Source: Pocillopora damicornis
Lineage: Eukaryota
Direction of reading: 5' to 3'
DNA: 64,000 bases
NCBI RefSeq assembly: GCF_003704095.1
Contig: NW_020843495.1
Location: 124,001 to 188,000 of the forward strand
The position numbers and the translations under genes were made by a program. Under the pieces are notes generated by a model. That model was not told the origin of the DNA, did not search any database, and saw only the letters and a program-made list of their open reading frames with translations. The number at the start of each line of letters is the position of its first letter. Positions within the stretch are counted from its first letter, which is position 1. Positions 1 to 19,454 of this stretch are shown here, one piece after another.

Positions 1-378
1 GCAGTCAATATCTAGAGAATAACAGAACATAATATGCCCATTTGTGGTTAGAATTAGTCTTCTCACATTGATAAGATCTCTCACTCACTTTGCTCGCTTG
101 TGAAAGATAGTATTACCACTCAAAGATAAAATTTGTATTTATCCACTGCCACATAATATCCCCTATACATATTACAAGAGCTAATGAGAAAAACAAAAAA
201 GTGCCCAACATTTTAGGTAATATGTGGTACAAACAAACACCTGCATAATGCTATTAGCAAGCATCTCCAGCAAAACTGAGGAAGAGTTAATGCTCATGGT
301 AAAAAGGTATGAAAATTGTCACAAACACAAGAAAAAATGCCAGTGTGATGGTCACTGAAGGCAACTGCAGCATTTTAC

Positions 379-1897
379 CTTGAGACCACTTGAGAACTCC
401 ACCATCTCTTCTGCCTGAATATTTTTAAGGCCATAAACACGAGCAATACCATCACCAATGGACAGAACGCGTCCAGTTTCTTCCAGTTCAGCCTTCTGTG
501 CAGACCCTAAAATTCTTTGTTCCAAGATTGAAGACACCTCTGCAGTCCCTGAAACACAGAAATAATGCTGTATCGTACATATCAGCTTTAAGCAGTAAGC
601 ACAAGTAACTTGGTGTGGGATTCTAAGGAGAAAATATCCCTGCCCCATGGAGTAAATTTCAGTGGTGACTTGCCCACCTCTCTGTAATCTCAAAAAGCAT
701 TTTCCAAAATTACATATACACTAGTCAACAATGACAAATCATTACTAGCTAACTTACCACTACTTGCAAAGTGTGGACTAGATGATGTTATATTTCGTAC
801 AGCAACTGATACTGCACCAAGGGATCCATGATAAATCTGAAAACCAGAAACTCAAATTGGAACAAAGCCTGTAACACTTTTGCAGATGTTATTTCATTCA
901 GTCTACAACAACATTTTTACACTACACCCAAAGCCATATTTTGATTGGAAACAAGTATGCAGATAATTCTAACTGATACTGTTTTCAACAGTTCTGACAG
1001 AGTGTATGGGTGCAGAGCTGCAACTGCAAATTTTGTAAATCTCTCTCCTCTGGCTCAATTTACAAACTGAGCTAGTTGCATTCTCCCAACACTTACATTA
1101 GTGAACAGAGAAAAAAGAAAGGATATCAACCAACTGTACAATGAAATTCCAATTGTACAACAAACATTTGTAACTGAAAATGACCTAAAATTATTGAAAC
1201 ATGTTTTGTACACTAAAAATTGTTTTTTCCACGGTAGTTGGAAAAATTTAAGAAGTTGGATTTAATTCCTTCTACCATTCTCGTAACCTTCCAATAAACA
1301 CAGGGTTACGATGAAGGCCATATCAAAAGCCCCCTTAATAAATTGAGGAAGACTTAGCATATGCGAGATTTAAGTCTTGACGTTTACTAACGGAATGTGC
1401 CGTAACATTATGCAAAGTAGATAAAATGTGGTTTATAAAAGACATGAAACTCAATTGCATTTCTGGTTACAAGTTGGGTGGCTAACCAATAGTAAATGCG
1501 GCTCACGGCGTTATCCGGTACACCCCTCTGGACTGCAAAACCATTGATATTGAGTTACGGAAATGTTCCATCACTATATTCCATGGACAACAGAAATTTC
1601 AGATAGCAATGAGTTATTCTTTTAATCCACTTCTTCGAATAAGATATCAAAGAAAGTTTTCCCTAGACCTTGTCGCCTATTACTGGGAAATTTCCGAACT
1701 TTTGATCGCTGCATCCCTTGAACCATTACGAGCCGATTCACGGTGCAACCAGGCCGCGCTCTTCCTTCACGACTTTAATTTGTCAAATACGACTGGGACA
1801 TGGACCTAAAAGGGCTTTAACAAACTGATTACTTTACCTGAGGTGTTCTTCTCGCCAAACTTCTCGTTAAAATGGACGTGAGTCGTGATGAAAGCAT
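379..1897 (-). CDS. ATP5F1A: ATP synthase F1 subunit alpha, mitochondrial (5' part; continues beyond window start)
   Basis: Exons 1897-1838, 836-758 and 548-379 have GT-AG boundaries and join in frame. They encode a presequence [20 protein letters not shown], then [15 protein letters not shown]...[35 protein letters not shown], the conserved F1-alpha N-terminus. Confidence 0.97.
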
Positions 1898-2069
1898 GAT
1901 TGCAAAGACTATTTTCCGGCAAATGTCCACGCTGCTACCTCTGCCAGAGAGAAGTATATCAGACCACGTGACCTTCTAGTGGGGCGAACAAAGGGCAACC
2001 TGGGTAAATTTTAGTTGATGACCGCTATCACCGGAGCCCGTAGCAGGAGCTAAGGTACATGTGGTAAGT
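1898..2069. promoter_or_regulatory. Putative bidirectional promoter ATP5F1A/HIS7, including the probable non-coding first exon of HIS7
   Basis: CpG-richer stretch with an E-box CACGTGAC at ~1965-1972. A plus-strand donor GTAAGT at 2064 could pair with the strong acceptor (T)nCAG at 4238-4239, 34 nt before the HIS7 ATG. Confidence 0.55.
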
Positions 2070-4273
2070 GCATATCGTCCTTTCACAAAACTTCGGAAGT
2101 ATTCTAATTTAAACAACAGAGTGTTGAAAATTAGGGATCGATAAAAAAATGAGTATTCGTAAAATTTCCGTACAGCACCATCCTACATTATGCATTCAGT
2201 TCTTGGATAGAGAAAACAATGACAAAAACAATACATTGCCATTGGGAAAACAGATTTGTTTTACAACAGTATGGGGCTGTGCGGAAATTTTACCTAAGTA
2301 TTTTTCTGGTCCGTTTCAGTGATGTACTCTGCATTAAGATCAAAATGAACTCGTTCTTTGCGCGCGCTCTTAAAGAGGGTATGTTAGCCAGGCTGAAGAG
2401 ATATTTAAGTTGAAGACTTTATTACAATAGGAGTATATGACTATTTCATCCTATTACAGGATGAAGGTAAGATTCTCACACAGCCCTGTAGTATTGTAAA
2501 ACAAAACTGTATTCCTAAAGGCAATCTATTGTTTTCGCCATTGTTATCTTTATCCAAGAACTGTATGCATAATGAAGGATGGGGCTATGGGGGAATCTTA
2601 CCCAGCTGTAAACGAGGCCTTCCAAGGGGGGGTTTTGATGTTCCCTTGTTGCTCGTATATCAACACTCCTGTCTCTTATTTGATAAGGGACAAATGTTGC
2701 TGTCACTTCGAGTTCTTTACTAGAATAAAAATGGCATTGTCACACTAAATTTGGCAATACAATCATTTTTGACTTGTGCCAGCACTGGGGCATGTTGTCT
2801 TTTTAACAAAGGATCAACCACACATAAATTTTTATTGGCTTTAGGAGTAGTAAGAATTACAGAGACCACTTCAAGGCTTCATATTTGTGTTTCATTATCG
2901 GTCGTTGGCCGATAGCTTCCCCACTCGAGTACTTATCTTTTACACTTATATAGTAATGAAGAACACAATTCTCTCTAGATAAATGTTGTATCATGGTTTG
3001 AATAAGGAGTCTTGACTTTTTAGTGGTTTATTAGTTTAGTGAGGCTGGAAAGATCACAAAAGAGTCATGCGGTCCTGGTCACAATGTCTCTGCCATGAAT
3101 ATCAAAGCAAAGAAATGTCACTTCATCAAAATTAAAAATGGATAGTCGCTGTTGCAAAATATTGCTTCTTTTCTATCAGTTTTTGTGGACTGTTGGTGCT
3201 CCTGAACAAGATTTTCACCATATTTTTTAGCAAATTATGTTGCTTGTTGCCAAGATCCCTTGAAGGCCTTGTAAATCAAAACATCAAATATACATTGGGC
3301 TTTGTGAGCTGTTTTAATCATGTTAAATGTTTCTGTCAATCTGAAAAATAGGATGTGTAATTGTATTCATAATCTAGCAGACAAAATTTTCAATCAGATT
3401 GAAAATCCTTTAGGCATGCTTTAGTGTGGAGTTGCCACACTCAGTATACATACCTGGTGGGTACCCTGTGTTCCTCTTATCTGTCTTGAGTGAGGAGCTG
3501 GTAGGCCAAACTTCCATTGTATTGATGAAATTCTGAGTCTGTTCTTGTGCAAAAAAGATTATTTTTCTTGATGTGACTTGTCTCTTAGTTAACATTGGCA
3601 CAGATTCGAACTGTCAGTCTTAAGGAAGTGTCCAACTTAAACAATTACAGGTGGTGTCACCAGTAATTCAGAGATTAATGGGAATGAACATGTGTAAAAC
3701 TGATACACATCTGTATTAAGGTTTTTTGAAACTGTTTCCTCAAGGAGAGCTTACAAGTTGGAAGGGGAATATTAGAAAGAAAACAATGGAACAGAAATAA
3801 ATTGTCAATCAAACATTTATGCCATCTGAAAAAGGTATATTCAATTCAAGAAAAAATCTCACTGCTTAATAGTCCAGAACGTAAATATGCCAGGGTTGTT
3901 AGAAGGATGGATATTTCTATCTACCAGATAATCTCTGTTGAGTGGGTGAGTGTAAGTGGACTATACCATGTTAGTATGTACTTAAACAGTGGGTAGCTTT
4001 TAGGGAATGCTCTAATTGGGTACTCAAACTCTGATATCTTTTGCAATTTACCTCTGTGCAATGTGCTAAGGGTTTGCACCCAAAAATCTTGTAATTGTTG
4101 GGGAAATAAGTTATTCAAAATCATCTTTTTGCACTATTTCATCTCACTGTTTCTGTACAGTCTTGTAAACATGTAATTCTTTAATTGCAATAATTGCAAT
4201 TATTATTTATCATGTTTCAAAACCAATTTTTTTTTTCAGGACACACCTGTGACAAAAACCCAAGACCTCAGAG

Positions 4274-6919
4274 ATGTCTGAAGTGACAGTCCTTGATTAT
4301 GGAGCAGGAAATATCCGAAGTCTCATTAATGCTCTTAAACTTCTTGGTTACAATGTGAAATTTGTGAAAGATGCCAAGGATATCCTAAGTGCAGAAAGGC
4401 TTATCTTTCCAGGTGTTGGAGCCTTTGGAAGTGCAATGGCTCTTCTTGAAAGCAGTGGTTTTGTGGAACCACTTAAGAAGTACATCCAACAAGACAGGCC
4501 ATACTTAGGAATTTGTCTTGGACTTCAGACATTGTGTGATGGCAGTGAAGAGTCTCCAGGTACCAAAGGCTTGTCTGTGATACCTGCAACTGTGACACAA
4601 TTCAACAAGGCTGAAGGTCTTGCTGTACCACATATGGGTTGGAATGGACTTAAGCTTCGTAAGGAATCAGCTCTGTTCCCAACTGGTTTCTCCAGTGAAG
4701 AAAAAGTCTACTTTGTCCACTCATATGCATTACATTCACAAAGCAAAGAGATCGATGAGTGGGTTCTTGCCACTACTGATTATGGAGAGGAGTTTATCAG
4801 CATTGTGCAAAAGGGAAATATTGTTGCTACACAGTTCCACCCAGAGAAAAGTGGAGAAATGGGAATTAAAATAATCAAGAGCTTCTTGGAAAGTTTTCCA
4901 ATGAGTGCAAAGATTGCAAGTATTCCCTACAAACTGCCTGATGCCAGTAAGCCAACACAACTTGGTCATCGCATCATTGCTTGTCTTGATGTCCGCAATA
5001 ATGATCAAGGAGACCTTGTGGTCACCAAAGGTGAACAATATGATGTGCGCGAACAATCCATTACAGAGAATATTCATTCTGTCACACAAATTAAGGGTGC
5101 TGTGAGAAACCTTGGAAAACCTGTAGAGTTGGCACGCAGGTATTTCAAGGAAGGAGCAGACGAAATAGTATTTTTGAATATTACAAGCTTCAAAAACTGC
5201 CCTCTCCATGATCTTCCAATGCTAGAGGTACTTCGGCAAGCATCTGAAAATATTTTTGTCCCCCTTACTGTCGGGGGTGGTATTCGTGAGATACTTGCCC
5301 CAGGCAAAGATGGTGACCAATCAAAGATGAAGTGTTACTCAGCTGTGGAAGTGGCAGCTGAATACTTCAGATCTGGTAATGTATTCAACTTTTTGGTAAA
5401 TAAAGTGACCTTTGTATGATACTGGAGACTAGTTTTGAATATTTGCCTATAATTATTGATTTTATGAAAGTGTTATGTGGTACAAGCATATATCACCAGT
5501 TGAAAACTACAGTTAAACTTCTTTGTAACAGCCAACCTAAGACAGAACTCTGTGCTGGGGTCATTTTAATGCTAAATAACTTTGATTATTATTTGTTTTG
5601 ATGCAAACAAGAAAATTATGGTTCAATATCTGATCCTACTATGATATGTATTGCTGATGGTCCATTGTAGAGGGGTGTAGAAATGGCCCTTGCAGAGAGT
5701 TTCAGTAAGAATAAAATTTTCAATAACACAGTTAAGGAATAGAGAAAAGTAAAGTGTCTGTGCCCTGACCTTAGCTCTAATCCCTGGTTACATATCTAAT
5801 GAAGACTTCATGTAGACAAGCTTACTAGTCTCTTCCACCTTCAATGCTTGTTTAATAACTGGATCTAAACAGTGGATAACAGGGGACCACTGTACTATTT
5901 TGACAGGAGCAGACAAGGTGTCCATTGGCAGTGATGCAGTGTATGCAGCTGAGAACTTCATATCATGTGGTGGAATTGCAACTGGCCAAACCTCTATTGA
6001 AACAATAGCTGCTGCATATGGGCGTCAGGCAGTAGTTATCTCAGTTGACCCAAAGCGAGTTTGTGTTCCATCCCGTGAGGCTGTACAGCATCATGTGATT
6101 CACTCAAGTTACCCTGGTCCATCTGGTGAGGAATACTGTTGGTACCAGTGCACAGTGAAAGGAGGGAGAGAGTTGCGAGATATTGGAGTGTATGAAATGG
6201 TGCAGGCATGTGAAGCTCTTGGTGCAGGAGAAATTATGCTTAACAGTATTGACAGGGATGGGTGAGTAACAATGTAAATCATATTATGTAAATCAAAGTT
6301 CACACAATTACTGCAAAATGCAAGTCCAACCTTCAGTTAGTGTATTCCACTGCTTGGATGTAAGGTGTGTATTTAAGGATTTAGTGAAAAGGAGATCACT
6401 GATAGGAATCAGGCTCCATACACAAGGACATTTCAGCCAATCTGTGAACAGAATGGACTGAAAGGAGGGTGGCTTTCAAGTAGTAACTCATCTCCATGCT
6501 CTATTTATGTGGTGTGAAACCACAGTGACATATTTTTTGATTGGATGAAGTTGATCAGATGGAAATCCTAAAAGAAAGTGATAAATTGGCTGAATACTGA
6601 ACTGGAAATGTGATTTTAGTCTTCACTGATTGTAGTACTAGCAAGAAGTTGGTGTTGTGGACTAATCATTTTCTTTGAATTTATTTTGGTTAGAACTAAT
6701 AGTGGTTACGATCTTGAACTGGTTGCCATGGTCAAAGAAGCTGTTGGTATTCCAGTGATTGCTTCTAGTGGTGCTGGTCATGTCAATCACTTCTCTGACG
6801 TGTTCCAAGATGCACATGCTGATGCAGCACTAGCAGCAGGAATATTTCATCGAAACACAGTTTCAATCAATGTTGTTAAAGAGCATTTGTTGAGTGAAGG
6901 AATCCCTGTTAGAGTTTAA
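4274..6919 (+). CDS. HIS7: Imidazole glycerol phosphate synthase, fused glutaminase (HisH) + cyclase (HisF), ~560 aa
   Basis: Exons 4274-5375, 5907-6261 and 6694-6919 (GT-AG, phases 1 and 2) total 1683 nt with no stops. Glutaminase motifs: DYGAGN, PGVG oxyanion strand, GICLG (catalytic Cys), FVHSY, QFHPEKS (His-Glu). Cyclase motifs: [62 protein letters not shown]. An in-frame TGA at 4250-4252 fixes the start codon. Confidence 0.98.
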
Positions 6920-7123
6920 ACAGATGGCTAAAAAGTTACCTTCAATTTACATCTAGACACTGTCTATGATTTCGTATCATAATATAATTTATAATAACTA
7001 GTCTCAACAGAGGGTAGAAATAAGAACTCACTGAAGAAACCTGTCAGTCAACTATTAGCCAACTGTTGGCTAAAATTTCAAGGATAATTATAGTCAGGGT
7101 GAAGGGTTGAAAGTTGTTCATTG

Positions 7124-7286
7124 TTAACCCTTTAACTCCCAGATATGATAAACATGTAACTTCCCCCTTTAGTATCCATACATTCAACAAACAGGTAATG
7201 AAAATACTCACACTTATCAGGTAGAAGTTACTATCTTGGTCTATCACCACTCACAACAAATCAGATCTTGGAAGTTAAATGGTTAA
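7124..7286. mobile_element. TTAA-flanked MITE (piggyBac-like, non-autonomous)
   Basis: Ends ttaaccctttaactccc ... ggaagttaaatggttaa form terminal inverted repeats. The interior resembles the copies at 21666 and 27228. Confidence 0.75.
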
Positions 7287-8138
7287 AAAAATTTAGTTGT
7301 TGCTGAGAAAAACAGCCATCTCACATTGAACTCTGTATTTATTCTTTCAAAAGGCAACCTGTAAAAAAAGGCATCTAAATTCATACAAAAACAAAGAAGT
7401 TGGATGATAAATAACTCTCTCACATTTTAGTGTGTAGAGTTGCTGAGTATTTTTACTCATTGTTTGTATTTTACAGCACAACTTGCCAAGATACTCAGTG
7501 ACACTACACACCAAAATGTCTAATAGGATATTTATCCCTTTCCTCTGGTGGTCAGCTTTTGAAATATTTCATGGAGTTTTTTAGTGAACCTTTCATGTAA
7601 TGAAGATATATGATAAGGAACCAATCAGTCTTAAGTGATGCACAGTTGTTTGTCATTATCATTTTATTACTTAATGCATCATACATGTATTTATTAAAGG
7701 AAAATTGATAAGCAATGTAATATAAAGTAAAAAGACACTGGCTGTATGCATTACATTTGCTTTACTATCTCTAAAATTTCTGTCATAGATTATGCTCTAA
7801 ACAAACCTGTTCCTAGCATTCAGTTGTTAAAACAAAGTGCAATAGCTAATGCCAAAATAGTAGCAGAGCAGTGAAAAAAGGAGTGATGTTTGGGTCAGGT
7901 CTCATTCCTTACCCACACCTTTACTTTTTCACTCTACTGCAAACATCACCCCAGTTTGCTAATTAAACACCTGGGACAGGCCATGTTCTCTCACACACAC
8001 ACACAAAAACCAAAGGTTGTAGCACTAAACAATCACTATGAAACAGATAAATGTTATTGATTAAATGAAGTAAAACCCTTAATGACTTTGAACATCAAGT
8101 TGTCTGATGGCATGGTTGTGTCATGATTCAAATGTTTT

Positions 8139-9161: not shown

Positions 9162-14339
<5,178 letters not shown>

Positions 14340-15506: not shown

Positions 15507-15954
15507 CTAAAAGTAAATACTTACAAAGAGAAGAAAAAAGGAACATATAAAAGAATGTACGTCTGATTCAATGGACATGGCCCTTTCTGTTGTTTGGATA
15601 TCAATGTTCTTAATGTCGCACGGGACTCTCTTAATAGTCTTTGAGCCTCTCAGACACAATAGAGCGGATCTTAATAATGAGAAGGACGTTTTCGCTCTGA
15701 TACATGAGATGGTCTTCGCATAACTCTCTACTTTCTTAGTTGAAATCAGCTCAGCCAGTCTGCTATGGCATATACCGCATTCTTTTCCCGTACCTCCGGT
15801 TGTGGTGAAGACCACTGGTGTAAATGTACCATGTTTAACTTCAATAACTCTGTCCCCATTTAGACGCTTCTTCTCCTTTTCGTGCATTCTTAAGATCTAC
15901 TGAGGTTCAAGACCTTGATACGAGTCTGCATTTGAGTGACATACCCTAACATCA
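15507..15954 (-). mobile_element. Degenerate 3' end of a non-LTR retrotransposon with a restriction-like endonuclease (CRE/R2-like group)
   Basis: Translation [29 protein letters not shown]...[17 protein letters not shown]...RLAELIS...[15 protein letters not shown] matches the C-terminus of RLE-type LINE ORFs as I recall them. In-frame stop at 15897-15899; the 5' part is lost in the N gap. Confidence 0.75.
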
Positions 15955-16245
15955 NNNNNNNNNNNNNNNNNNNNNNNNNNNNNNNNNNNNNNNNNNNNNN
16001 NNNNNNNNNNNNNNNNNNNNNNNNNNNNNNNNNNNNNNNNNNNNNNNNNNNNNNNNNNNNNNNNNNNNNNNNNNNNNNNNNNNNNNNNNNNNNNNNNNNN
16101 NNNNNNNNNNNNNNNNNNNNNNNNNNNNNNNNNNNNNNNNNNNNNNNNNNNNNNNNNNNNNNNNNNNNNNNNNNNNNNNNNNNNNNNNNNNNNNNNNNNN
16201 NNNNNNNNNNNNNNNNNNNNNNNNNNNNNNNNNNNNNNNNNNNNN
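15955..16245. other. Assembly gap (N run)
   Basis: Run of N bases. Confidence 1.
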
Positions 16246-17169
16246 CGTTAATTGGAAAACACATATATATTATTTATAAATAGGATGTGGTGTAATCACT
16301 TACAATTTTGTAATCCAAGAGAATATTAATGTAAAATCTCTTGTCTAACTATAGACTGTTACACATATCTATGAAGGTAAAACCGGTATCAAGCTGTCTC
16401 ACATTCGCTCTGTAAGTTTTCAGTTCATGTGTGTGTTGCATCCTACAAGTGACCACTTCATGATTTTACAAATTTTCGCAAATGTAAGCATTTTAAGAAG
16501 CACAACAGATTTTCTGAAAATATGATGTCTTCTCACAATCTAGAAAGGGGATACTTTGGACATTCAATGGAAAGGATCAGTTTAGGGTACTTTTAAACTA
16601 CTTCCCGAGCCCCACCCTCAATGTCTCTTGCCAAGATGCACGAATTAGCCGAAACAAACTTGTTTGTTACCATATTTATTGAATTAAGTGTACAAACGTT
16701 TATTAAGTTCGTCTCGACTTCACCGGTAGGATTTCAATACGATCCGAGGTGACAAAATTATCACCCAAATTTCAACCCAAAAATTTTTCCAGAAAACAAA
16801 ATTCGCTAAATTTGCCTCTTATGATCATAAGAAAACCGATCTTATAATTTGAATTTGTTCAAAGTTACCTTTAAAATTACTGAAAAATATATAATCAACA
16901 TTTTTTGAGTGAACTGGGCTGGAAGATCTCCTTTAATTAATTGTAAAGAGTGTATTTGCCAAAGTGTCAGTTTAGATCGAGAAACCATCTCAGTTATGGC
17001 GAGTAAATTCATGAATTAAAGATTCTTCATTTATGCATAAGCCTTTTTTCCCAGTTGTGAGAACGATTTCGACCACATCAACTTGTCTTTGTTCATTATC
17101 CTCTCCGTCTTAATGACCACAGCAGAACCAAGTAATTTAGTTCAGCCACTGTATCTCCATTGTGTCCCG

Positions 17170-19454
17170 TCATCCTCTGGTGTAATTATGCTGTGCTTGT
17201 CTGTGTTTCTTCTTTTTGTTCCATATTCGATCCACTCTAAAGCGACTGTATTCACTAATCTTTTCACCACACTTTGGACAAGTGTGAACTACATTCTTGA
17301 GCCCGTCCATTATAAACGGTATCCACATACAACAGTAACACCTGAAACGTAATACCACCAGCTTAGAAATTCGAAATCACGCTGGGAAACAGGAAAGTAA
17401 CCATTACAAAATATTTGCGCATAAAAAAGCCTATTAACTGTGCCTTTTAAACTTGCCGTCAAATTACGAAGATTAACGAGAGTAAAAATTGTGATGGAAA
17501 ATTATAGGAATAGAAAGGATAAGAGAAATTTAAAAAAATAATAAAGTGACTGTGTATTTCTCGGCTAAGATCTCCGGCGGTGATTTTTATTGCTCAGCAT
17601 GATAAGCTTCTTGTAGAACTAATACAACATTGATTTAGTTTTTCACTACTTTATTAAGGTCTATTGCTCGATGTGGCAAAAACATATGAGATCAACTAAA
17701 CAGAAGCTGTTTTGCGAAATGCAGTCTAGGAGTAGGGTTTTTCATTAGTAAAATGACGTTTTGAAATTAACAGGGATAGGTTGAAAAATATATCTCATCA
17801 CTGTGAAAGTGATACCATACCATGGTAATAAACAAAGCAAGCGTTATTTGTCAGAAAAAGTCACGTGAATCTCCCAAGTTGACGACTTGAAATCAAATGC
17901 ATCAGACACAAGGTTAAGGTTTTTTGTGGCCTGGAGTCAACCTTTTAAACAGGAATGAAAATAATTTAAAAATTAACAAAAAAAAAAGAATGAATAATAA
18001 AAATGAATGACACCCGAGAGATAACACAAGATAAAATTCTTTCAATAATAACCTTTTACACCGGTTGAAAAGGTTATTGCTTTTTTATATTTCCTTAAAA
18101 TTCAATGTTGTTACTTCTAAAACACGTTTCTCGGGAGTCCATTCCTTAACAAGTGACTCTTTTAGTATTCAAAGATTTCTTTGTCCCTTTTATCAAATCC
18201 AATTTGAATAAGCTACATTTATTTCAACACGTTGTTGATACTCTAGCAATAATTAAAGGTAGTGCAACACGAATCAACTTTTCAAGTTCGAAACTGTTGA
18301 AAAAAAAACCCTGTGCGACATGAAAAATGTATACTGGGCAGACAAATAATTAAGAACAGCGTCGCTTGTAAATTTTCCCCGTCATCCTCACGTCTCAGCT
18401 AGTCGGAAAATGAATACAGAAAAAAAAATTGAGCAGGTGGAGAAGCTGATGAAGTGAAGCTGATTAGTAACAAAGGTTTGTTCTGTATCATGTCAGCATG
18501 AGGTGTCCTCTCCTTTATGGTGCGATTGTTATATGAAAAGAATGTTTTGACAACTATCTACATAACTGAAACATTTCACGCCAAGTTCTCGGTCAAATGA
18601 TTGGTTCTCGAGAGGGAAGATTCGTATTAGAACGCGTGGCGTTAGGGCACTAATTGATAAAAGGTGATGTGTTTATATCGAGTTTTACGACACAGGCTCC
18701 TCAGTAAAGCTGATTACTGTTGCTAAATCCAAGTCGCGCGAAGAGCTACTCATCTGCATTCGATAAATTAAATCAGTACTGTTTATTCTATATACGGCAG
18801 ACAGTTTGCAAAACAACCCTGTTTGATTCGATTTAAAATAGGTGAAGTCTGAAATTAAATGTACTGTATATGATCTCAGATGAAAACAAAGACCCAAACT
18901 TATTTAATTTTACTGACTTTTGATCCGAGATTGTTCCTAAATAAATTTCACTTCAAATCGTTATAACTGACTAAAATTCCATTGACAAACTTTGATTCTG
19001 ATTGGTATGAATAATTCGGCTTTATTTTCAATGAAAAAATCCGTCTGCCTCCGTGAAACACAAACGAAAAATTTGATTCGATACTCTTGTTTTGAATACA
19101 TGTAAGTCTCGGAACAATCATATTCATGGCGATATTTCCAACCACAGAGAATGAATTTTCTCCAAGAGTCACTCATACAACAGAAACAAAATATATTTGG
19201 AGCGAAATGCTCATTCATACTTACTGAAATATGCATAGACAGGCCGAGGTCCAATAGGTATATTTTCCAGATTTGAAACTGGTACGAGTGACAATTTTTT
19301 CATGGCAATATGGGCATGTAATGTACACTGGAACATCTTCGAAAGCGGTTTCGGCATCAGAGGATTCCGCGCCATCTGCACCTGCTTGTTTTGTACACTC
19401 TTCGTCTTCACCCACTTTCTGTGAAACCAGGTGTATCCTTTCTTCGCTGGTCAT
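17170..19454 (-). CDS. LITAF-domain zinc-binding membrane protein, ~133 aa
   Basis: Exons 19454-19225 and 17341-17170 (phase 2, GT-AG). Sequence VPVYITCPYC...hydrophobic WTSACLCIFQCYCCMWIPFIMD...VVHTCPKC gives the CxxC / hydrophobic / HxCxxC LITAF signature. Confidence 0.93.

What the first reader, a model, noticed from the sequence alone, without database searches (positions are those of the whole stretch)
4274..6919. Intact fungal-type HIS7 (histidine biosynthesis) gene in an animal chromosome
Seen: a complete spliced ~560-aa HisH-HisF fusion with the Cys-His-Glu triad and cyclase motifs, no transit peptide, flanked by animal genes and host MITEs. Known: histidine is an essential amino acid for nearly all animals, and a fungal-like de novo pathway has been reported in robust-clade scleractinian corals, so this is rare but not unprecedented. 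Inference: the host makes histidine independently of symbionts or diet, and also produces AICAR, which feeds purine synthesis.
Basis: partly seen in the sequence, partly recalled or inferred. Interest (0 to 1): 0.8.

Follow-up and report, generated by a model that had tools for sequence, protein, structure and literature searches.

The report
Coral host histidine-synthesis gene HIS7
This is a real, spliced and expressed coral (Pocillopora) gene for the fused HisH-HisF enzyme of histidine synthesis, inherited from the common ancestor of animals and fungi, but the pathway it belongs to was already described for robust corals in 2018.

Summary
Window 4274-6919 (+) carries three coding exons (4274-5375, 5907-6261, 6694-6919) for a 560-aa HisH-HisF fusion, imidazole glycerol phosphate synthase (HIS7). 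A non-coding 5' exon ends at 2063.

- **Expression:** RNA contigs from three studies carry all three splice joints.
- **No transit peptide:** an in-frame TGA at 4250-4252 rules out an N-terminal extension.
- **Active-site residues:** all those known from yeast HIS7 are kept.
- **Selection:** dN/dS against two other robust corals is 0.13-0.21.
- **Neighbours:** ATP synthase alpha lies head-to-head upstream and a prenyltransferase beta gene lies downstream. The same order is seen in Stylophora, and the ATP synthase linkage in Desmophyllum and two more distant unnamed assemblies.
- **Rest of the pathway:** all other yeast-type histidine genes (HIS1-HIS6) have matches in the same genome, which is Pocillopora damicornis.
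- **Phylogeny:** corals, other anthozoan-like sequences and two sponges form one clade, sister to fungi. "Fungal-type" therefore means shared opisthokont descent, not transfer. One intron is shared with a sponge in position and phase.

The pathway, this enzyme included, was published for robust corals (Ying et al. 2018), so this is confirmation, not discovery. Enzyme activity remains untested. The scan also flagged HIS1 and HIS4 of this genome elsewhere.

The parts
2041..2063 (+). HIS7 non-coding 5' exon. The 3' end at 2063 is exact. The 5' end is only where the RNA contigs stop.
   Evidence: RNA contigs of X15 and X18 join 2063 to 4240 (GT..AG, 22-24 nt on the short side). X20 shows the same exon as a loose end with one mismatch.
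2064..4239 (+). 5' UTR intron of HIS7 (2176 nt), holding two MITE-like repeats
   Evidence: Joint. GTAAGT donor at 2064 and AG acceptor at 4238-4239.
2159..2601 (.). Pair of about 137-nt MITE-like elements (2159-2295 and 2465-2601) in inverted orientation, each with 21-26-nt terminal inverted repeats. High copy number in the genome.
   Evidence: I1-I3. Summed contig depth is about 45,000 against about 22 in run X11, and many divergent loose ends start at 2291-2295.
4240..5375 (+). HIS7 first coding exon. In-frame TGA at 4250-4252, ATG at 4274. Encodes HisH (residues 1 to about 206), the linker, and the first third of HisF up to residue 367 plus one base of the next codon.
5376..5906 (+). Intron (531 nt, phase 1, in codon 368). 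Shared among robust corals.
   Evidence: Joint skipping 531 nt in all three RNA runs. Same position in Stylophora and Desmophyllum.
5907..6261 (+). HIS7 second coding exon: HisF middle part (residues 368-486 in part), including the eukaryote-type insertion and D415
6262..6693 (+). Intron (432 nt, phase 2, inside the Gly codon of D-R-D-G|T-N-S-G-Y-D). Position and phase are shared with the sponge Corticium candelabrum. Low-depth RNA contigs retain it.
   Evidence: Joints. Corticium junction GAT GG|GT ... CAG|T ACC. Alignment columns.
6694..6919 (+). HIS7 last coding exon (HisF C-terminus, TAA at 6917-6919). RNA contigs run on past 6999 into the 3' UTR.
1838..1930 (-). ATP synthase alpha (ATP5F1A) exon 1. 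It encodes the presequence [20 protein letters not shown] and is transcribed away from HIS7, with about 110 bp between the ends of the two transcripts' contigs.
   Evidence: High-depth RNA contigs at 1838-1918 and 1838-1930. Translation.
352..693 (-). Open frame holding the next ATP5F1A exon (N-terminal beta-barrel domain)
   Evidence: PF02874 at 3.8e-5.
11845..13604 (-). Further exons probably lie nearer to HIS7.
   Evidence: PF00432 at 2.1e-10 and 7.4e-6. Same neighbour in Stylophora.

Best explanation
The locus is the coral host's own single-copy gene for imidazole glycerol phosphate synthase (HIS7/hisHF, KEGG K01663). The genome is Pocillopora damicornis, a robust-clade scleractinian.

Mechanism, by homology to the solved yeast enzyme:
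- The N-terminal HisH domain hydrolyses glutamine with its Cys81-His189-Glu191 triad.
- The ammonia passes through the gated barrel of the C-terminal HisF domain.
- There PRFAR is converted to imidazole glycerol phosphate, which goes on to histidine, and AICAR, which returns to purine synthesis.

The protein has no targeting peptide, so it should be cytosolic, as in fungi. The gene descends vertically from the opisthokont ancestor, was lost in most animals, and is kept under purifying selection. It is transcribed from a short divergent promoter region shared with ATP synthase alpha. It works together with HIS1-HIS6 equivalents, all of which have matches in the same genome.

Shown here: gene structure, splicing, presence in RNA libraries, conserved residues, synteny, phylogeny, and matches to the other pathway genes. 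Inferred: catalytic activity, cytosolic location, and net histidine synthesis by the host.
For: - **Domains and full-length match to yeast HIS7 (1JVN):** 5e-93, 1.8e-46 and 1.7e-21 for the three exons.
- **Residues:** all catalytic and gate residues are present.
- **Splicing:** spliced contigs in RNA libraries of three studies. Transcript-derived 560-aa proteins P0121 and P0134 match the three exon translations at 1-367, 369-485 and 487-560 with 99.5-100% identity.
- **Selection:** dN/dS is 0.21 against Stylophora and 0.13 against Desmophyllum.
- **Copy number:** a single locus in the genome.
- **Synteny:** ATP5F1A(-)/HIS7(+)/prenyltransferase(-) in Stylophora. ATP5F1A lies upstream in Desmophyllum and in two unnamed assemblies at 71% and 65% identity.
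- **Tree (careful, 38 rows):** animal clade 100/99, fungal clade 100/99, animals plus fungi 99/99 against algae and fused prokaryotic forms.
- **Shared intron:** a phase-2 intron is shared with the sponge Corticium.
- **Rest of the pathway in G000:** HIS4, HIS3 as an intact 200-aa ORF, HIS6, HIS2, HIS5, and HIS1 as micro-exons.
- **Species:** HIS3 is 100% identical to a P. damicornis protein, and the assembly size matches the published 234 Mb.
- **Publication:** described for robust corals in PMC6214176.
Against: - No enzyme assay, complementation or isotope tracing exists for any coral histidine gene. PMC9506716 says so as of 2022.
- The RNA evidence is from assembled contigs. It shows spliced transcripts but not levels, tissue, or aposymbiotic expression.
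- Coverage of HIS6 (profile positions 36-174 of 255) and HIS1 (three micro-exons scored, others read by eye) was not checked to full length, so their intactness is not proven here.
- Six of nine coding differences seen among the laid runs are non-synonymous. The sample is small, but it is more than the between-genus ratio would suggest.
Confidence: 0.85

Rival explanations
1. The gene is kept mainly for something other than histidine supply, such as AICAR/ZMP production or another link to nucleotide metabolism. The pathway as a whole would not deliver net histidine.
For: Ying et al. report that Nematostella keeps K01663 without the rest of the pathway, and they suggest a nucleotide-metabolism role there. 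Two unnamed, more distant assemblies also keep HIS7 beside ATP5F1A, and their other pathway genes were not examined.
Against: The substrate PRFAR is made only by the preceding histidine steps. In this genome those steps (HIS1, HIS4, HIS6) and the following ones (HIS3, HIS5, HIS2) all have matches.
Confidence: 0.08
2. The gene entered the coral lineage by horizontal transfer from a fungus, alga or bacterium. It would then be fungal-type by origin.
For: Raw identity to fused bacterial and archaeal HisHF (58-60%) and to Mucoromycota and green algae (56-58%) is about as high as to sponges (57-63%). Best SwissProt hits of the coral pathway proteins are fungal or plant.
Against: Animals, including calcareous and homoscleromorph sponges, form one clade with 100/99 support. 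That clade is sister to fungi, not inside them. An intron position and phase are shared between coral and sponge. Synteny with ATP5F1A is conserved down to 65% identity.
Confidence: 0.04
3. The gene is contamination or a chimeric assembly: it belongs to the dinoflagellate symbiont, a fungus or a bacterium and was mis-joined to coral DNA.
For: Only that coral tissue is a holobiont, and that the DNA contigs of run X11 break at the repeat at 2190-2560.
Against: - The spliced mRNA links a 5' exon at 2063, on the same DNA contig as ATP5F1A exon 1, to the coding exons.
- The same gene order occurs in four other independent assemblies.
- Exon and intron GC (41-47% and 34-36%) fits the window.
- Host MITEs lie inside its intron.
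Confidence: 0.01

Closest known systems
Robust-coral histidine pathway gene K01663 (Fungia ffun1.m4.971, Goniastrea gasp1.m3.19737, Stylophora pistillata XP_022785437.1), Ying et al. 2018, Genome Biol 19:175
   Same: - Orthologous gene, 90% protein identity to Stylophora.
- Same two coding introns.
- Same neighbours, ATP5F1A and prenyltransferase beta.
- Same complete seven-gene pathway in the genome.
   Different: A different species (Pocillopora damicornis), which that paper did not analyse and whose genome paper does not mention histidine.

Added here:
- The non-coding 5' exon and the roughly 110-bp divergent arrangement with ATP5F1A.
- The sponge orthologues and the shared intron.
- A tree placing animals as sister to fungi.
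Saccharomyces cerevisiae HIS7 (PDB 1JVN, 1OX4-1OX6)
   Same: - Same HisH-N/HisF-C fusion.
- Similar length (560 against 552 aa), with no targeting peptide.
- Triad, catalytic Asp pair, Lys and four gate residues conserved.
- Same long insertion in the HisF barrel (VSVDPKRV...YCWYQCT.KGGRE).
   Different: Aligned over the full length (E 5e-93, 1.8e-46 and 1.7e-21 for the three exons). The coral gene has introns, a 9-residue longer loop after the first barrel strand, and belongs to the animal clade.
Plant HISN4 (Arabidopsis hisHF, Q9SZ30)
   Same: The same fused enzyme. It is the best SwissProt hit reported for the coral protein, and NCBI names the Stylophora orthologue "chloroplastic-like".
   Different: The plant enzyme carries a chloroplast transit peptide. 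The coral one cannot, because of the in-frame stop 8 codons before the ATG. Green-algal sequences fall on the other side of the tree from animals and fungi.
Bacterial HisH + HisF heterodimer (Thermotoga maritima 1GPW)
   Same: The same two domains and chemistry.
   Different: Two separate polypeptides, without the eukaryote-type insertion. Similarity to the stand-alone subunits is much weaker (E 1e-37 to 3e-32 for HisH, 5e-15 for the last HisF exon) than to fused forms.

Membership tests
Imidazole glycerol phosphate synthase, fused HisH-HisF type (HIS7 / hisHF, K01663) | N-terminal class I glutamine amidotransferase domain of the HisH equivalog | tested here: met
   TIGR01855 at 210.5 bits against a cut-off of 105.4, residues 4-206. 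PF00117 at 5e-23.
Imidazole glycerol phosphate synthase, fused HisH-HisF type (HIS7 / hisHF, K01663) | Cys-His-Glu catalytic triad of HisH (yeast C83, H193, E195; residue numbers from the literature on 1JVN, recalled) | tested here: met
   C81 in GICLGLQ, and H189 and E191 in FHPEKS, aligned column for column with 1JVN.
Imidazole glycerol phosphate synthase, fused HisH-HisF type (HIS7 / hisHF, K01663) | Complete HisF (beta/alpha)8 cyclase domain | tested here: met
   TIGR00735 positions 2-86, 97-180 and 182-254 of 254 over the three exons. Each exon was scored alone, so the whole-protein cut-off could not be applied. 1JVN is aligned over chain positions 6-359, 361-477 and 479-551.
Imidazole glycerol phosphate synthase, fused HisH-HisF type (HIS7 / hisHF, K01663) | Cyclase catalytic Asp pair, the signalling Lys and the four ammonia-gate residues (yeast D245, D404, K258; R239, E293, K360, E465) | tested here: met
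   D239, D415 and K252; R233, E297, K371 and E476.
Imidazole glycerol phosphate synthase, fused HisH-HisF type (HIS7 / hisHF, K01663) | Both domains on one polypeptide from one mRNA | tested here: met
   RNA contigs span the exon joints. Transcript-derived 560-aa proteins P0121 and P0134.
Imidazole glycerol phosphate synthase, fused HisH-HisF type (HIS7 / hisHF, K01663) | Glutamine-dependent conversion of PRFAR to IGP and AICAR | not testable with these tools
   Needs an enzyme assay or complementation of a his7 mutant.
Robust-coral de novo histidine pathway (Ying et al. 2018) | Host is a robust-clade scleractinian | tested here: met
   HIS3 of the same genome is 100% identical to Pocillopora damicornis pdam_00000220. 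HIS7 is sister to Stylophora within named robust corals.
Robust-coral de novo histidine pathway (Ying et al. 2018) | All seven yeast-type genes present in the same genome | tested here: met
   HIS1 on C1472 as micro-exons, HIS4 on C2740, HIS6 on C538, HIS7 in this window, HIS3 on C3883, HIS5 on C2801, HIS2 on C2969. Full-length intactness was shown only for HIS7 and HIS3.
Robust-coral de novo histidine pathway (Ying et al. 2018) | Animal genomic context with conserved synteny | tested here: met
   ATP5F1A and prenyltransferase neighbours here and in Stylophora. ATP5F1A also in Desmophyllum and two other assemblies.

The most novel reading that the evidence does not exclude
Robust corals may not be unique among animals. 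HIS7 orthologues sit on chromosomes of a calcareous sponge (Sycon ciliatum, between FancD2 and a PI3-kinase gene) and of a homoscleromorph sponge (Corticium candelabrum). They form one clade with the cnidarian genes, and the Corticium gene shares an intron position and phase with them. If these sponges also keep HIS1-HIS6, de novo histidine synthesis survived in several non-bilaterian lineages. Histidine auxotrophy would then have arisen by repeated independent losses rather than once at the base of animals.
Probability: 0.35. Interest if true: 0.55.

Novelty: already known. Interest (0 to 1): 0.28.

Why it matters
Histidine is treated as essential for animals. A host-encoded pathway would make robust corals independent of symbionts and food for it, which bears on coral nutrition, bleaching tolerance and symbiont choice. 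That point was made in 2018. This window adds a well-resolved, expressed example from Pocillopora damicornis, a widely used coral. It also adds firmer evidence that the gene is an inherited animal gene and not a transfer: the sponge orthologues, the shared intron, and the animal clade sister to fungi. What is still missing in the field is any functional proof, and this gene model could be used directly for that.

Tried and rejected
- **PF01634 (HisG) on the own genome found nothing.** This looked like a missing first step. It was an artefact of micro-exons: TIGR00070 gave one weak 26-aa hit. Reading that locus and scanning three exons by reference showed HisG and HisG_C pieces.
- **PF00977 on the own genome found only HIS7.** HIS6 needed the eukaryote-specific model TIGR02129.
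- **The 50%-representative search gave few full-length fused proteins and no names.** Several were very long branches. In the quick tree they pulled animals next to the algal/prokaryotic group. I rebuilt the tree without them using the careful method and rely on that tree.
- **The look-up of encoding contigs had no record for the Oculina protein.**
- **The HIS3 protein search was saturated by coral variants.** It could not say whether sponges have HIS3, but it did name the species.
- **The two assemblies with 71% and 65% identical HIS7 (ERZ25071792, ERZ25073755) could not be named.**
- **Not done on purpose:** structure prediction was not run, because the match to a solved structure is unambiguous. 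I never joined the three exon translations into one sequence. Each exon was searched by reference, and the transcript-derived proteins P0134 and P0121 served as full-length stand-ins in alignments and trees. The run of N at about 15908-16246 was left untouched.
Full report
**What is there.** Reading window 3800-7400 and its open frames shows three coding exons on the + strand.
- Exon 4274-5375, followed by GT at 5376.
- Exon 5907-6261, preceded by AG at 5905-5906 and followed by GTGAGT at 6262.
- Exon 6694-6919, preceded by AG at 6692-6693 and ending in TAA.
- Together they are 1683 nt, or 560 codons plus stop. Both split codons read GGA.

Each was searched by reference. HisH (TIGR01855) scores 210.5 bits against a cut-off of 105.4 on residues 4-206. 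The hisF model TIGR00735 is covered at positions 2-86, 97-180 and 182-254 by the three exons in turn. The closest solved structure is yeast HIS7 (1JVN), with E-values of 5e-93, 1.8e-46 and 1.7e-21 for the three pieces. The alignment covers chain positions 6-551.

**Active-site residues.** The residue roles come from the literature on 1JVN and are recalled, not tested. All of them are present:
- Glutaminase triad: C81, H189, E191.
- Cyclase acid/base pair: D239 and D415.
- Signalling lysine: K252.
- Ammonia-gate residues: R233, E297, K371, E476.

**The gene is transcribed and spliced as modelled.**
- Two 560-aa proteins, P0121 and P0134, come from short intron-less public contigs. They match the three exon translations at positions 1-367, 369-485 and 487-560 with 99.5-100% identity, leaving exactly one residue for each split codon.
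- I laid contigs of three RNA libraries from three studies on window 1000-6999. All three show the joint 5375|5907. All three also join 6261 to exon 3; in X20 one base (6694) reads T, a synonymous variant.
- Two libraries also join 2063 to 4240 with GT..AG ends, and the third shows the same 5' exon as a loose end with one mismatch.
- The gene therefore has a non-coding first exon ending at 2063 and a 2176-nt 5' UTR intron.
- Low-depth contigs retaining the second coding intron are also present.
- Contigs cannot give expression levels, and none of these runs is known to be aposymbiotic.

**No targeting peptide.** Within the exon that carries the ATG at 4274 there is an in-frame TGA at 4250-4252. 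No upstream exon can therefore extend the protein. Residue 3 already aligns with the first strand of yeast HIS7.

**Context.**
- **ATP synthase alpha:** it lies on the minus strand upstream. Its first exon at 1838-1930 encodes a typical mitochondrial presequence and is covered by very deep RNA contigs. The next exon lies within 352-693.
- **Shared promoter region:** the contig ends of the two divergent transcripts are about 110 bp apart. This agrees with another note of this scan (s1-775525) about a shared promoter region.
- **Downstream:** convergent exons of a prenyltransferase beta subunit (PF00432). Pfam cannot decide between PGGT1B and its paralogues.
- **MITEs:** the 5' UTR intron holds two 137-nt elements with terminal inverted repeats. 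Summed contig depth in a DNA run is about 2000 times that of the flanks.

**Is the assembly sound?** In an independent DNA run (X11), one contig covers 1000-2212 and runs on leftwards, and another covers 2548-6999. They break only at the repeat, which short overlapping contigs bridge. The spliced mRNA itself ties the 5' exon, which lies on the ATP5F1A side of the repeat, to the coding exons. The same gene order occurs elsewhere:
- ATP5F1A(-)/HIS7(+)/prenyltransferase(-) in Stylophora pistillata.
- ATP5F1A upstream in Desmophyllum pertusum.
- ATP5F1A upstream in two unnamed assemblies whose HIS7 is only 71% and 65% identical.

A chimera or contaminant is excluded for practical purposes.

**Whose genome?** The assembly has 234,350,878 bases in 4393 contigs. 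Its HIS3 protein is 100% identical to Pocillopora damicornis pdam_00000220. The published P. damicornis assembly is 234 Mb, and that paper does not mention histidine. HIS7 is 90% identical to the Stylophora protein XP_022785437.1.

**The rest of the pathway.** Searching the whole genome exon by exon gave matches for all six other genes:

| Gene | Place | What was found |
|---|---|---|
| HIS4 | C2740 | Histidinol_dh positions 6-410 in six exons, plus PRA-CH |
| HIS3 | C3883 | intact intron-less 200-aa ORF |
| HIS6 | C538 | TIGR02129, two exons at E about 1e-21 |
| HIS2 | C2969 | TIGR01856 at 4e-39 |
| HIS5 | C2801 | TIGR01141 in four exons |
| HIS1 | C1472 | micro-exons (HisG and HisG_C) |

HIS1 was missed by PF01634. 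It is present as micro-exons of 24-33 aa. Three that I scanned by reference match HisG and HisG_C (E 4.5e-5, 6.3e-5, 4.1e-7), and others are readable by eye. Another note of this scan (s1-776145) describes it as a 16-exon gene. Full-length intactness is shown here only for HIS7 and HIS3.

**Selection.** Nei-Gojobori estimates, summed over the three exons, give dN/dS of 0.21 against Stylophora and 0.13 against Desmophyllum, with dS of 0.22 and 0.70. That is clear purifying selection. Among the runs laid, six of nine coding differences are non-synonymous. This is a small sample that I do not over-read.

**Origin.** The careful maximum-likelihood tree has 38 rows and uses P0134 as a stand-in for the window gene.
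- One clade holds named robust corals, unnamed anthozoan-like sequences, Sycon ciliatum and Corticium candelabrum (support 100/99).
- Fungi form a second clade (100/99).
- The two together are separated from green algae and fused prokaryotic HisHF at 99/99.

An earlier quick tree with several very long rows placed the animal clade next to the algal/prokaryotic group. In both trees animals are one clade and are not nested in fungi. The sponge genes lie among animal genes on large chromosomes. The coral's second coding intron lies inside the Gly codon of D-R/K-D-G|T-N-S-G-Y-D, in phase 2. The Corticium gene has an intron at exactly that place and phase. The first coral coding intron is shared only among corals, and Sycon has no introns. 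"Fungal-type" is therefore a fair description of the architecture, but the history is vertical descent from the opisthokont ancestor with many losses. Ying et al. proposed the same.

**What is known.** Ying et al. 2018 (PMC6214176) reported a complete fungal-like histidine pathway, K01663 included, in the robust corals Fungia, Goniastrea and Stylophora. They found introns and conserved synteny, absence from complex corals and sea anemones (except K01663 in Nematostella), and argued that it is ancestral. A 2022 paper still notes that function is unconfirmed (PMC9506716). I found no paper in the held library on sponge HIS genes. A follow-up agent of this scan reached the same "already published" verdict for HIS4 of this genome (s1-769288).

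**Verdict.** The finding is a new species example of a published phenomenon, so I class it as already known and score interest low to moderate. The residual novelty lies in three things: the sponge orthologues with a shared intron, the deep conservation of the head-to-head pairing with ATP5F1A, and the still open question of function.

Noticed in passing
window 1838-2063: ATP5F1A exon 1 (minus strand, 1838-1930) and the HIS7 non-coding 5' exon (plus strand, ending at 2063) are divergent, with only about 110 bp between the ends of their RNA contigs. The head-to-head pairing is kept in Stylophora, Desmophyllum and two assemblies whose HIS7 is 65-71% identical. It is therefore old and possibly a shared bidirectional promoter.
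   Followed up: partly
L029:10001-13390 (Corticium candelabrum) and L028:10001-11719 (Sycon ciliatum): Two sponges of different classes carry HIS7 on large chromosomes among animal genes. Corticium shares the phase-2 intron in the DxDG|TNSGYD motif with corals, and Sycon is intron-less. Whether these sponges have the other histidine genes was not tested.
   Followed up: partly
proteins P0030, P0034, P0035, P0050, P0085, P0088 and others: Many Deltaproteobacteria, Thermodesulfatator and Archaeoglobi encode a fused HisH-HisF of 523-531 aa that is 58-60% identical to the coral protein. In the tree it groups with green-algal sequences and not with stand-alone bacterial subunits. This is a eukaryote-like fused form in prokaryotes whose direction of transfer is open.
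   Followed up: no
window 2159-2295 and 2465-2601: Two copies of a roughly 137-nt MITE-like element with 21-26-nt terminal inverted repeats lie in inverted orientation inside the HIS7 5' UTR intron. Summed contig depth in a DNA run is about 45,000 against about 22 for the flanks.
   Followed up: partly
window 6232-6722: In all three RNA libraries a low-depth contig runs straight through the second coding intron (depth 3-8 against 28-105 for the spliced form). This could be intron retention, pre-mRNA or DNA carry-over.
   Followed up: no
G000:C1472:146761-149838 (L013): HIS1 (ATP phosphoribosyltransferase) is split into exons of only about 12-33 codons, so whole-genome profile searches miss it at normal thresholds.
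   Followed up: partly
window 17170-17358 and 19221-19454 (minus strand): Two exons with the two halves of a LITAF-like zinc-ribbon domain (PF10601 at 5e-10 and 6e-9), probably one LITAF-family gene downstream of the prenyltransferase gene.
   Followed up: no
window 15507-15887 (minus strand) and about 15908-16246: A 126-aa open frame abuts a run of N (an assembly gap or masked stretch).
   Followed up: no
L030 and L031 (ENA ERZ25071792, ERZ25073755): Two unnamed eukaryotic assemblies with prokaryote-style gene calls carry HIS7 (71% and 65% identical) beside ATP synthase alpha. Their identity is unknown: a corallimorpharian, another hexacoral, or even a complex coral. It would bear on the claimed loss outside Robusta.
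   Followed up: no
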